Positions 60,182 through 64,000 of a stretch of 64,000 nt of DNA are shown here, piece by piece; positions within the stretch are counted from its first letter, which is position 1, and every line of letters starts with the position of its first letter. The DNA is from Epithemia pelagica. Its lineage: Eukaryota; Protista; Bacillariophyta. Position numbers and translations under genes: made by a program. The DNA is taken from assembly GCA_946965045.2 (NCBI GenBank), contig OX337240.1:1302001-1366000 (forward strand). The letters are read 5' to 3'. Below the pieces are notes generated by a model. That model was not told where the DNA came from. It was given only the letters and a program-made list of their open reading frames with translations, and made no database searches.

Positions 60182-61426
60182 TCATCGTGGATGACTACAC
60201 ATGTTGCAGATTGAGTCAATTGGTTTGTTGCGAAAAGTGCATCTGGAACAGTTCCAATGAACACCATTGTTGATTATGTTCTCATCGTCTATCGTCAGGT
60301 CGATAACTTCAACAGATGACAAGGAGGGTTGCTTAGAAGGAGCACCAGCATTTTTCTGCACTTTCGGTACACTTTTGAGACCAGGTCTCTTTCGTTTAAC
60401 CGGTTGAGGATTCGGTTGCTCTCCATCGTATTGAGCACGACTTTTCTTGGTACCTTCCATATCCATTTTCTTTGCAGGTCTTAAGTCTCCAAGAGTTGGA
60501 TCTGTTTGAATTACAACGACTTCCTCTTCATCGCTGCTTTCGCCAGATTGTGATCTATTGATTGTGCAGGGGCGACAACAACGATTTCCACGTAACCGCA
60601 TCTGTTGCTGACGGTGACGGGCCATAGCTGCTGCCACGGCTGCCTCCCGGGGGGTCATCCATTGTTGAAATTGAGAATCCCCTCCCAGCTTCTGTCCATC
60701 CAAGGCTTGTATACGAGCTGTACGGGCTGAAGACGAAGAGTTGCCGTTGGTGCCCGTACCAAGTGTATGTCCCACACCTCCAAACGCCGGCATCGAATCG
60801 GCTCCCAGGCTCAAATTAGATGACATGAGACTCGCATGTTCTTCCAGTATGTCGTCCATGAGTTTGTAGAACTGTTTATTGTGAGGCCCGTATTCGCAGT
60901 GGGCAAGTTCGTGGGCCAACGTTCCCGCTACATCTTCGTAGACATGTAATCGAGATTCGTGATTGGATTTGTTGGGATGTCGCAGTCGTAAATGAATGGT
61001 ATGGCTCTTTTTCCCACCCGACCACGTGGTCCTATTGTACCCCCATATATTGTTCGACATTTTGTGCAATTTCCGCCTTCGGTTTGGTTCGAAATCCAGT
61101 CCATCATTGCAGCAACAAAGTTCGGAAATGGAGACGACGTTGTAACAACGACGTTGAATAATAGGCATAAATTCTCGAACAACTCGTCGAAGCATTTCAA
61201 GCGCCTGCTCAGCTTTGGCCAGAGTCGGAATATGGCATACTTTGGGTGGTACAAAGGAACTGTTGGTAGCGTATTTCTGAGCAAATGTGGACTCCAGCGT
61301 GTTGAAACGGCTGTTGTTGTGGTCGCCTCTCGTAACCTTGGTGCTGCCGGTGTCGGAATCGTTACGACCACTTTCGATCCCTCCATGCAGATCTTTCAAC
61401 GTTACAGGACGATTTGACCGAGGCAT
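60182..61426 (-). CDS. WSS1: Wss1 / WLM-domain DNA-protein crosslink metalloprotease
   Basis: IHLRLR, TLAHELAH (HExxH), GPHNKQFY. SHP-like FGGVGHTLG, VIM REAAVAAAMAR, SIM EVIDLT, RanBP2 finger WNCSRCTFRN...CNMC. Confidence 0.93.
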   Translation of the reverse strand: MPRSNRPVTLKDLHGGIESGRNDSDTGSTKVTRGDHNNSRFNTLESTFAQKYATNSSFVPPKVCHIPTLAKAEQALEMLRRVVREFMPIIQRRCYNVVSISELCCCNDGLDFEPNRRRKLHKMSNNIWGYNRTTWSGGKKSHTIHLRLRHPNKSNHESRLHVYEDVAGTLAHELAHCEYGPHNKQFYKLMDDILEEHASLMSSNLSLGADSMPAFGGVGHTLGTGTNGNSSSSARTARIQALDGQKLGGDSQFQQWMTPREAAVAAAMARHRQQQMRLRGNRCCRPCTINRSQSGESSDEEEVVVIQTDPTLGDLRPAKKMDMEGTKKSRAQYDGEQPNPQPVKRKRPGLKSVPKVQKNAGAPSKQPSLSSVEVIDLTIDDENIINNGVHWNCSRCTFRNKPIDSICNMCSHPR

Positions 61427-61781
61427 GCCTTTTCATGGAATAGTGAGATCAGTTCTGAAGTCTATGCTCTTCTTTGGGAAACATTGGGAAATGGAATATA
61501 GCAGACAGAAACGACGTTTCGCTCTTGGCGCGCCGCATTTGTCGCCGCATCATGCATCTGGATTTGGCGCGGAGTTGTTGGCATCAATTTTCGACGTAGG
61601 GGTTGGCTCTGAGTGGGGCGCAACGAAACCTGTTGCCCCTCTTCGACCCTGACCACACAAGATTCCGCCGCGACGACGCCATTGCCAATCTCGATCTCGA
61701 CATCTCCCAACTTTTGGTCCCTGTTACAAAGTTGCGCCAATTCTCTCAACCCACGTATTTCTACATCAAGAGCTAGACGAA

Positions 61782-62512
61782 ATGGCGGGAGGAAGCAGTT
61801 CGTTGTCTTGCAAGGCCGCATGTCAAATGATTAGCAATGGAAGCAATGCTTCTATGGGCACGTTGATGCTCACCCAGAACGGCGACAAGGTACAAATAAC
61901 TGGGAGTTTAACAGGATTGGGTGGAAGCGCAGGCAAACGTGGTATCTCGGTTTGCACTCATGGTAATCTTTCCAGTGGGGCTCAGTCATGCGGTCCCATT
62001 TTCAACCCTTTCGGTAGGTTTCGTGCGGCTTTCAGTGGCTGGAGGCTGGAGGCAATATGTGTTTTGGTCGTTTGGAGAGAAAGTAATGTCAAACGTGGGT
62101 TTGGCGTCAAGGATAATGCCGAGCAACGTTGATGGACAATGCTAAGATTGCACTGGTGTCGCTGAATTATTTCCTTTGGGAGTTTCAGTGTTGTTGTCTT
62201 CTCTCTTATACACAAATTCGCCCTCATATTCGATCTTGTATCATTGAATCCACAGAAAAGACTCATGGAAGTCCGGAAGATGAATTGCGAATGGTGGGAG
62301 ATTTGGGAAACATTGTTGTAACAGAATCAGGAGATTCTCAAGTGGAGTTGACAGATTCTGTCATTACGTTGCTGGGACCCCATTCAATCATCGGGCGGTC
62401 TATTGTTATTTTCGCAGGCGAAGACGATCAAGGGAGAGGGGGACACGAGAACTCGTTGCAGACCGGTAATGCTGGGCCTCGAATTGCCGCTGGAGTAGTT
62501 GGACTTGCGTAG
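61782..62512 (+). CDS. Cu/Zn superoxide-dismutase-fold protein lacking copper ligands (probable pseudo-enzyme)
   Basis: join(61782..62013,62256..62512), 162 aa. GPIFNP, THGSPEDELRMVGDLGN, SIIGRSIV and TGNAGPRIAAGVVG align without gaps to the SOD1 core. Confidence 0.9.
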
Positions 62513-62791: not shown

Positions 62792-64000
62792 CTACAACAG
62801 CTTAGTTACAACACCCGTTCCTACTGTCATTCCTCCTTCACGTAAATTGAAGCGCAGTCCGGGTTCTAGAGCCAGCGGGAAGATGATCTCAGCAGTGATT
62901 GTTGTGTTGTCGCCAGGCATGACCATCTCGGTGCCTTCTTTAAGCGTGATGGCCCCATTGACATCGGCTGTTCGGAAAAAGAACTGCGGTTTGTAGTTAC
63001 TCATGAAAGGCGTGTGACGACCACCCTCGTCTTGTTTGAGGCAATAAATTTCGGCTTCGAACTTTGTGGTCGTCTTGGCATAGCCTGGAGCGGCCAACAC
63101 TTGTCCCCTAGTCACATCATCACGCTTCAAACTTCGAAGCAATGCACCAATATTGTCACCTGCTTGGCCTTGGTCCAACAACTTTTTGAACATTTCCACA
63201 CCAGTGCAGGTTGTTTTCTGGTCTTTGCCCATACCAAGGACTTCCAGTTCATCACCAACTTTAACAATACCTTGTTCCACTCGACCAGTGACTACCGTTC
63301 CACGACCGGGAATCGAGAATGTATCTTCAATCGGCATCAAAAATGGCTTATCAAGATCACGAACGGGTTCTGGAATGTGTTCATCCACCGCATTCATGAG
63401 TTCCATCACTTTGTCGGCACCAATTTCTGGATCTCTACTTTCGGCAGCAGCCAACGCAGAACCCCGAATAATCGGAATATTGTCCGCATCAAAATCATAG
63501 AACTCCAAAAGCTCGCGAATTTCCATTTCTACCAATTCCAAAAGTTCCTCATCGTCTACCATGTCGCACTTGTTGAGGAAAACAACCAAATTCGGAATGC
63601 CCACTTGTTTTGCCAGCAAAATGTGTTCACGAGTTTGTGGCATGGGACCGTCAGTGGCGGCGACTACCAAGATTCCACCATCCATTTGCGCAGCGCCTGT
63701 AATCATGTTCTTCACGTAATCAGCATGCCCTGGACTGTTGACGGGAAAGGCAAGCAACATCGTAATATCGTGAGAAGGACCATGCAATGGTTATGGAACT
63801 AGCAAGTGGGTCATCAAGCGTGACAAACAAGACTTATGCCATCAGAATCTCGCGCGAGAGACGTACCAATCAATGTGACCATAATGTCTAGTGTCGGTTT
63901 CGTATTCAATATGACTTGTGTTGATGGTAATTTTACGAGCTTTCTCCTCTGGCGCCTTGTCGATGTCTTCATAAGTCATGGCTTTGGAATAGCCCTTTTC
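62792..64000 (-). CDS. TUFM: Mitochondrial elongation factor Tu, 5'-partial
   Basis: complement join(62792..63734,63867..>64000). Intron splits HIDC|[39 protein letters not shown]. The intron shows it is nuclear. Confidence 0.96.

What the first reader, a model, noticed from the sequence alone, without database searches (positions are those of the whole stretch)
61782..62512. Cu/Zn-SOD fold with all copper ligands lost: pseudo-SOD or re-wired metal site
Seen (human SOD1 numbering, ungapped alignment): H46S, H48C, H63I and H120F remove all four Cu ligands. H80M and H63I leave only H71 and D83 of the Zn site. C57A and C146A remove the disulfide. R143, GDLGN, IIGR, the electrostatic loop and dimer-interface residues are retained, so the fold appears maintained. 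It lacks the ATX1 domain and CxC tail of the CCS chaperone. Inference: not a dismutase; possibly a heterodimer partner or regulator of SOD1/CCS, or a soft-ligand Cu(I) binder using the new Cys48, Cys60 and Met80. It would inflate counts of diatom CuZnSODs.
Basis: partly seen in the sequence, partly recalled or inferred. Interest (0 to 1): 0.75.

Follow-up and report, generated by a model that had tools for sequence, protein, structure and literature searches.

The report
Diatom SOD1-like protein without metal ligands
This is a real, expressed diatom gene for a protein with the copper/zinc superoxide dismutase fold but without most metal-binding residues; it belongs to an old family, found across diatoms and related algae, that databases and recent papers still count as a Cu/Zn enzyme, and the ligand loss in diatoms was already noted in print in 2015.

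Summary
A two-exon gene (61782-62013 and 62256-62512, with a 242-nt GT..AG intron) encodes a 162-aa SOD1-fold protein. At the SOD1 positions it has S46, C48, I63, F120, M80, A57 and A146. H71, D83, D124, T137 and R143 are kept.

A spliced transcript contig confirms the gene model. Synonymous sites against the syntenic Epithemia ortholog are saturated while pN is 0.13, so the gene is under purifying selection.

The gene belongs to a monophyletic family across Ochrophyta (diatoms, Triparma, brown algae, pelagophytes, Nannochloropsis and others). I63, H71, M80, D83, D124 and R143 are near-invariant and the disulfide is absent. H46 and H48 were lost only in diatoms, and C48 is mainly a pennate feature.

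The family's loops are about as conserved as those of active SODs. This genome has no other Sod_Cu-fold gene, so it has no SOD1 or CCS partner. It does have Fe/Mn- and Ni-SODs.

Most likely this is a conserved homodimeric protein that is not a canonical dismutase. Its function is unknown.

Groussman et al. 2015 already noted the ligand loss in diatom "Cu-ZnSODs". A 2026 metaproteomics paper nevertheless assigns one Cu and one Zn to a family member. The gene is therefore a new member of a noted but uncharacterised group.

The parts
61670..61781 (+). 5' untranslated region, as far as the transcript contig reaches. It lies in the 355-bp divergent intergenic region shared with the WLM gene.
   Evidence: Run X4 contig record 10 starts at 61670. 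There is no ATG in 61670-61781.
61782..62013 (+). Exon 1 (codons 1-77 plus the first base of codon 78). It covers strands 1-4 and the disulfide sub-loop, and carries S46, C48, A57, C60 and I63 (SOD1 numbering).
   Evidence: Pfam Sod_Cu 26.3 bits. PDB alignment to bovine SOD. Codon coordinates.
62014..62255 (+). Intron, 242 nt, GT..AG, phase 1.
   Evidence: Spliced contigs in runs X4 and X5 skip exactly these 242 nt. The Epithemia clementina ortholog has an intron at the same position and phase (141 nt).
62256..62512 (+). Exon 2 including the TAG stop. It covers the Zn sub-loop, strands 5-8 and the electrostatic loop, and carries H71, M80, D83, F120, D124, T137, R143 and A146.
   Evidence: Pfam Sod_Cu 79.2 bits. 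PDB matches at E 1e-24 to 1e-28 with residue-level alignments.

Best explanation
The gene encodes a cytosolic, probably homodimeric protein derived from SOD1 that is functional but is not a canonical Cu,Zn superoxide dismutase.

It belongs to an Ochrophyta-wide, vertically inherited sister family of stramenopile SOD1. In this family:
- the bridging His63 is Ile;
- the Zn ligand His80 is Met;
- His120 is Lys, Thr, Phe, Tyr, Cys or His;
- the C57-C146 disulfide is gone;
- diatoms additionally lost His46, and most lost His48.

Inferred mechanism (about 50% within this explanation): the former binuclear site is filled by side chains (Ile63, Met or Lys at 80, an aromatic residue or Lys at 120). The fold would then no longer need Cu, Zn or the disulfide. 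The His71-Asp124 link, the Zn sub-loop, the electrostatic loop and the Thr137/Arg143 channel are kept because the protein still uses that channel. In diatoms Cys60, and in pennates Cys48, are added there. The channel may bind an anion, a small ligand or a partner, or carry out thiol chemistry.

The protein acts on its own, not through SOD1 or CCS, which this genome lacks.

Shown: the gene model, expression, residue identities, family extent, purifying selection and the absence of SOD1/CCS. Inferred: loss of dismutase activity, the metal-free state, the homodimer and the use of the channel.
For: - Residues at ligand positions.
- Spliced transcript.
- Selection: 77% amino-acid identity to the syntenic Epithemia ortholog, with pS 0.83 (saturated) and pN 0.13. 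The intron position is the same and the WLM / Sod_Cu / EF-Tu gene order is conserved.
- Family signature: in 142 full-length members I63, H71, M80, D83, D124 and R143 are near-invariant, while positions 46, 48 and 120 vary by clade. Lys80 and Ser83 variants exist, which argues against a fixed metal-ligand set.
- Phylogeny: the family is monophyletic (SH-aLRT 99). It branches like the species tree and is sister to canonical stramenopile-type SOD1s.
- Loop conservation: mean pairwise identity is 0.76 (family) against 0.77 (canonical) in the Zn sub-loop, and 0.73 against 0.77 in loop VII.
- Fold: SOD1 structures at TM 0.8-0.89.
- AlphaFold confidence: for the ortholog P0002 it drops in the two metal-binding loops (66-75 and 48-65). 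A canonical control with the same alignment depth scores 88-98 there.
- Homodimer: model score 0.79 against best control 0.00. That mark was reached by 21 of 30 proteins solved as pairs and 0 of 23 solved as single chains. The runs agree in 100% of contacts and partner pLDDT is at least 88. The interface is the SOD1 one, but the pass may come from memory of solved SOD1 dimers.
- No partner in the genome: no other Sod_Cu-fold locus. Two Fe/Mn-SOD and three NiSOD loci are present.
- Protein-level expression of a family member in natural Fragilariopsis populations.
Against: - No activity or metal content has been measured for any member.
- The electrostatic loop, Thr137 and Arg143 are conserved as in active enzymes. 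This could mean that some catalysis on a small anion persists.
- Non-diatom members keep His46 and His48 across many classes, which hints at a residual metal or catalytic role there.
- His71 is invariant and Met is a good Cu(I) ligand, so a single re-wired metal site is not excluded.
- The lower AlphaFold confidence may reflect the alignment used rather than real disorder.
- The fold and dimer predictions used the Epithemia ortholog, not the window protein itself.
Confidence: 0.7

Rival explanations
1. It is a soft-metal, probably Cu(I), binding, buffering or chaperone protein. The site would be re-wired from His71 and Met80, plus Cys60 and Cys48 in pennate diatoms.
For: Met80 is near-invariant and His71 invariant across the family. 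C60 occurs in 71 of 77 diatom members and C48 in 46 of 77. The window protein has all of them.
Against: No ligand set is shared by the whole family. C48 is N, H, T or A in centric diatoms and some pennates. C60 is Ala or Gly outside diatoms and bolidophytes. Position 80 is Lys in several diatom members and 83 is Ser in some.
Confidence: 0.17
2. It is still a superoxide dismutase, or a related oxidoreductase acting on a small anion, with a non-canonical catalytic centre in the preserved channel.
For: Thr137, Arg143, Asp124 and the electrostatic loop are conserved at the level seen in active SODs.
Against: All four Cu ligands are absent in the window protein. The positions that would have to carry a new centre (46, 48, 120) differ between clades. 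The genome already has five other SOD genes.
Confidence: 0.08
3. It is a heterodimer partner, decoy or regulator of SOD1 or CCS. This would resemble CCS domain II or the poxvirus SOD-like decoys.
For: SOD1 dimer-interface residues are kept, and the predicted dimer interface is the SOD1 one.
Against: The genome holds no other Sod_Cu-fold sequence, by HMM or by protein search. There is no ATX1 domain and no CxC tail, and no HMA match lies near the only Sod_Cu locus.
Confidence: 0.03
4. It is a decaying relic of SOD1 with no function.
For: Catalytic residues are lost.
Against: The reading frame is intact and the mRNA is spliced. Synonymous sites are saturated while pN is 0.13. Family-wide conservation equals that of active SODs. 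A family member is detected as protein in the field.
Confidence: 0.02

Closest known systems
Eukaryotic Cu,Zn superoxide dismutase (SOD1; Pfam PF00080)
   Same: It has the same fold (TM 0.8-0.89 and 45-49% identity to solved SOD1s). The length, dimer-interface residues, Zn sub-loop and electrostatic-loop motifs, D124, T137 and R143 are the same. Like SOD1 it has no targeting peptide.
   Different: All four Cu ligands and two of the four Zn ligands are replaced, and the C57-C146 disulfide is absent.
Diatom 'putative Cu-ZnSOD' transcripts lacking canonical His ligands (Groussman et al. 2015, PMC4460010, S12 Fig); Fragilariopsis 'CuZnSOD' of PMC13754022
   Same: It is the same family. Only H71 and D83 are conserved among the ligands. 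The quantified peptide DGSSSCGPIFNPFGK occurs in family member P0222, which has S46, C48, C60, I63 and M80.
   Different: Those papers treat the proteins as Cu/Zn SODs. They do not report that the family extends over Ochrophyta, that ligands were lost stepwise, or that SOD1 and CCS are absent from a genome carrying the gene.
CCS (copper chaperone for SOD1), domain II
   Same: It is an SOD1-like domain with missing metal ligands and an SOD1-type interface.
   Different: It has no ATX1/HMA domain I and no CxC domain III. No SOD1 client exists in this genome. It is far closer in sequence to SOD1 than CCS domain II is; that last comparison is from my own knowledge.
Inactive SOD-like proteins: Bacillus subtilis YojM and the poxvirus SOD homologs (from my own knowledge, not tested here)
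   Same: These are precedents for Sod_Cu-fold proteins that lost Cu ligands and dismutase activity.
   Different: Their origins are unrelated.
Cu-only SODs (fungal SOD5 type; from my own knowledge)
   Same: They are SOD1 relatives with an altered metal complement.
   Different: Cu-only SODs keep all four Cu histidines and lose the Zn site and the electrostatic loop. This family shows nearly the opposite pattern.

Membership tests
Cu,Zn superoxide dismutase (SOD1) | Sod_Cu beta-barrel fold and sequence homology | tested here: met
   PF00080 on both exons. PDB phmmer E down to 1e-28. Foldseek TM 0.8-0.89 for the ortholog model.
Cu,Zn superoxide dismutase (SOD1) | Cu ligands His46, His48, His63, His120 | tested here: not met
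   Ser, Cys, Ile and Phe at these positions.
Cu,Zn superoxide dismutase (SOD1) | Zn ligands His63, His71, His80, Asp83 | tested here: not met
   Only His71 and Asp83 remain. Position 63 is Ile and position 80 is Met.
Cu,Zn superoxide dismutase (SOD1) | Intrasubunit disulfide Cys57-Cys146 | tested here: not met
   Both positions are Ala.
Cu,Zn superoxide dismutase (SOD1) | Superoxide dismutase activity | not testable with these tools
   Needs an enzyme assay on purified protein.
CCS copper chaperone | N-terminal ATX1/HMA domain with MxCxxC | tested here: not met
   No HMA hit on the protein. The eight HMA matches in the genome lie on other contigs, most in ORFs of over 1000 aa, and none is near a Sod_Cu match. 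Only 355 bp separate the start codon from the neighbouring gene.
CCS copper chaperone | C-terminal CxC domain III | tested here: not met
   The protein ends at GVVGLA followed by the stop codon.
CCS copper chaperone | An SOD1 client in the same organism | tested here: not met
   There is no other Sod_Cu-fold locus in the 60.5-Mb genome.
Ochrophyte ligand-deficient SOD1-like family (diatom 'other homologs' of Groussman 2015) | Ile63 and Met80, His71 and Asp83 kept, no C57-C146 disulfide | tested here: met
   Signature table of 142 members including the window protein.
Ochrophyte ligand-deficient SOD1-like family (diatom 'other homologs' of Groussman 2015) | Placement inside the family clade | tested here: met
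   The window groups with Epithemia inside the raphid pennate diatoms. The family clade has SH-aLRT 99.
Cu-only SOD (SOD5 type) | Four Cu histidines kept; Zn site and electrostatic loop lost | tested here: not met
   The Cu histidines are absent and the electrostatic loop is present.

The most novel reading that the evidence does not exclude
Across Ochrophyta the usual 'CuZnSOD' is not a Cu/Zn metalloenzyme. It would be an ancient, abundant SOD1-derived protein that has filled in its metal sites and acquired a different activity in the preserved Arg143/Thr137 channel. In diatoms this could be thiol-based chemistry at Cys60, with Cys48 added in pennates. If so, SOD inventories of diatoms and brown algae, and the Cu and Zn quotas computed from them, need revision.
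Probability: 0.4. Interest if true: 0.65.

Novelty: new member of a known kind. Interest (0 to 1): 0.5.

Why it matters
Diatom, brown-algal and other ochrophyte genomes are annotated as having a Cu/Zn SOD. One search shows such names in Nitzschia, Fistulifera, Ectocarpus and Triparma.

Evolutionary arguments about metal use have been built on this annotation, for example that pennate diatoms prefer Cu-ZnSOD to FeSOD (PMC4460010). Quantitative Cu:C and Zn:C estimates have too (PMC13754022, which assumes one Cu and one Zn per monomer).

If the protein binds neither metal canonically, those inferences need correction. An abundant, ancient protein of major primary producers would also be without a known function. 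It would be a natural example of an SOD1 fold stabilised without metals or the disulfide. That is relevant to SOD1 folding studies.

Tried and rejected
- CCS identity: rejected. There is no HMA domain, no CxC tail and no SOD1 client.
- Pseudogene or decay: rejected.
- Numeric dN/dS: not obtainable. Synonymous sites against Epithemia are saturated (pS 0.83), so only pN 0.13 and pN/pS of about 0.16 are given.
- Cys48-Cys60 and Met80 geometry: could not be measured, because structure prediction returns no coordinates (one search shows no model file).
- Literature by accession numbers (XP_002183988, EEC44657, CBJ25614, D7FW94): no paper found.
- Searches for biochemical work on algal CuZnSOD or for a pseudoenzyme description: nothing relevant found.
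- Ectocarpus copper-stress paper: it mentions only Fe-SODs.
- Joined (spliced) window protein: not sent to any search, fold or complex tool. The exons were searched separately by reference. The joined sequence was used only inside scripts, for alignment, trees and codon counts. The Epithemia ortholog P0002 (77% identical) served as proxy for the fold and dimer predictions.
- The search of protein representatives and the protein-atlas search: not used. The word searches had already settled the family.

Full report
**Gene model and expression**

The finding's interval holds a two-exon gene on the + strand. Exon 1 is 61782-62013. A GT..AG intron spans 62014-62255 (242 nt, phase 1). Exon 2 is 62256-62512 and ends in TAG. 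The product has 162 residues.

The exon junction reads NPF-E-KTHG. This is identical to the junction in the NCBI-annotated ortholog of Epithemia clementina, P0002.

Reads confirm the model. A 2094-nt contig of run X4 carries the same organism label as the DNA runs that hold the window. It covers 61670-62012, skips exactly the 242 nt and continues from 62255. A metatranscriptome contig (X5, a close relative) shows the same joint. No ATG lies between 61670 and the start codon.

The protein starts directly at the first strand of the barrel, with no signal or transit peptide. I therefore infer a cytosolic location.

**The observation**

Both exons match Pfam Sod_Cu, at 26.3 and 79.2 bits.
- replaced: H46S, H48C, H63I, H120F, H80M, C57A, C146A;
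- kept: H71, D83, D124, T137, R143, GDLGN, IIGR and the electrostatic-loop motif;
- new: a Cys at position 60.

There are two corrections. The interval includes an intron, and the N-terminal 40 residues need two small gaps against bovine SOD.

**Not lineage-specific decay**

The Epithemia locus L009 has the same gene order (WLM protease, SOD-like gene, EF-Tu) and an intron at the same position and phase. The two proteins are 77% identical. Synonymous sites are saturated (pS 0.83) while pN is 0.13. This shows strong purifying selection, although a numeric dN/dS cannot be given.

**Extent of the family**

A word search with exon 2 and a profile search recover the same type of protein from:
- pennate and centric diatoms;
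- Triparma;
- brown algae;
- Tribonema, Chrysoparadoxa, Fibrocapsa and Phaeomonas;
- pelagophytes;
- Nannochloropsis.

Among 142 full-length members, I63, H71, M80, D83, D124 and R143 are near-invariant and the C57-C146 pair is absent. The former Cu positions vary by clade:

| Clade | Position 46 | Position 48 | Position 120 |
|---|---|---|---|
| Most non-diatoms | His | His | Lys |
| Brown algae | Arg | His | Thr |
| Pelagophytes | His | His | Phe |
| Centric diatoms | Ser | Asn or His | Tyr or His |
| Pennate diatoms | Ser | Cys | Tyr, Phe or Cys |

Cys60 appears in bolidophytes and diatoms. A few members have Lys80 or Ser83.

**Phylogeny**

Trees show the family as one clade (SH-aLRT 99). 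Its branching follows the species tree: Triparma is sister to diatoms, and centric diatoms branch before pennates.

The family is sister to canonical, fully liganded stramenopile-type SOD1s. One of these, P0239, comes from a Triceratium transcriptome that also holds a family member, P0167.

The simplest reading is an old duplication of SOD1. H63, H80, H120 and the disulfide were lost first in one copy. H46 and H48 were lost later, in diatoms. The canonical copy was then lost in most lineages.

**Constraint on the loops**

Mean pairwise identity is 0.76 in the family against 0.77 in canonical SODs for the Zn sub-loop. For loop VII it is 0.73 against 0.77. The taxon sampling of the two sets differs, so this comparison is approximate.

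**Structure and dimer**

These predictions used the Epithemia ortholog as proxy, because the joined window protein has no reference.
- AlphaFold gives an SOD1 barrel with mean pLDDT 82.7. Confidence is low in the Zn loop (66-75) and in the electrostatic loop (48-65).
- A canonical control with an alignment of equal depth scores 95.9 overall and 88-98 in those loops.
- Foldseek finds only SOD1s.
- The homodimer model scores 0.79 against a best control of 0.00. That mark was reached by 21 of 30 proteins solved as pairs and 0 of 23 solved as single chains. The runs agree in 100% of contacts, and partner pLDDT is at least 88.
- The predicted interface is the SOD1 one. The pass may come from memory of solved SOD1 dimers.

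**Genomic context**

The 60.5-Mb genome has no other Sod_Cu-fold sequence, either by HMM or by a canonical SOD1 protein query. The eight HMA matches lie on other contigs, most in ORFs of over 1000 aa, and none is linked to a Sod_Cu match. There is therefore no SOD1 and no CCS. That removes the partner/regulator idea.

Two Fe/Mn-SOD loci and three NiSOD loci are present. Superoxide removal does not depend on this gene.

**Literature**

Groussman et al. 2015 (PMC4460010) state that in most diatom Cu-ZnSOD transcripts only His71 and Asp83 are conserved, and that full ligand sets occur in four species. They nevertheless score these sequences as putative Cu-ZnSODs. The core observation is therefore published at family level.

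A 2026 Science Advances paper (PMC13754022) quantifies the 'CuZnSOD' of Fragilariopsis kerguelensis with the peptide DGSSSCGPIFNPFGK. It assumes one Cu and one Zn per monomer. That peptide occurs in family member P0222, which has S46, C48, C60, I63 and M80. The paper does not mention ligands.

Public names for family members include 'superoxide dismutase [Cu-Zn]' and 'CuZN SOD'. I found no biochemical study of any member.

**Interpretation**

The protein cannot build the canonical binuclear site. The positions that would have to carry a new centre differ between clades. The surrounding loops and the Arg143/Thr137 channel are nevertheless conserved as in active enzymes.

I consider it most likely a functional protein that is not a canonical dismutase. 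Its metal sites would be filled by side chains, and it would still use the channel. A re-wired Cu(I) site, or residual catalysis, remain possible and need biochemistry.

The gene is a further member of a noted but uncharacterised group. What this work adds:
- the family extends across Ochrophyta;
- the ligands were lost stepwise;
- SOD1 and CCS are absent from a complete genome that carries the gene;
- there is a direct link to a recent metal-quota calculation.

Noticed in passing
window 60182-61426 (-): A WLM-domain metalloprotease gene (PF08325, 94.8 bits) with a C-terminal RanBP2-type zinc ribbon. It is transcribed divergently from the SOD-like gene across a 355-bp spacer. The same neighbour is present in Epithemia clementina (L009).
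   Followed up: partly
window 62792-63787 (-) and beyond: An EF-Tu gene convergent with the SOD-like gene. The listed ORF starts at TTG and matches the GTP_EFTU profile only from position 75, so an upstream exon is expected beyond 63787. The X4 transcript contig runs from the SOD-like gene into this gene. This suggests overlapping 3' ends, or transcripts merged during assembly.
   Followed up: no
window 62906-62939: Runs X1 and X2 show a depth spike and loose ends. Three short, high-depth contigs match only about 33 nt inside the EF-Tu coding region. They probably come from other tuf genes (organelle, symbiont or bacteria) that share a conserved stretch.
   Followed up: no
window 61787, 61959, 62347, 62434 and the intron: Run X2 carries the same organism label as the window's source but differs at 11 bases and one 1-nt deletion within 1.7 kb. 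In the SOD-like gene there are two synonymous changes and two replacements: H60Y, which is the residue seen in Epithemia, and E108D. The 61959 C>T change is also seen in X4 and X5. None of these changes touches a former ligand position.
   Followed up: partly
protein P0001 (window 62132-62509): The public protein collection holds a 126-aa prokaryote-style gene call that reads through the intron into exon 2. Many metagenomic 'Cu-Zn family superoxide dismutase' entries are similar exon-2 fragments with spurious N-termini.
   Followed up: partly
proteins P0239 and P0167 (Triceratium, MMETSP1175): One centric-diatom transcriptome holds both a fully liganded canonical SOD1 and a member of the ligand-deficient family. 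The two forms can therefore coexist, if neither is a contaminant.
   Followed up: partly
G000 C4:1825710, C2:104040, C2:153836; C8:3569502, C7:3607414: The genome has three NiSOD-like loci and two Fe/Mn-SOD loci.
   Followed up: no
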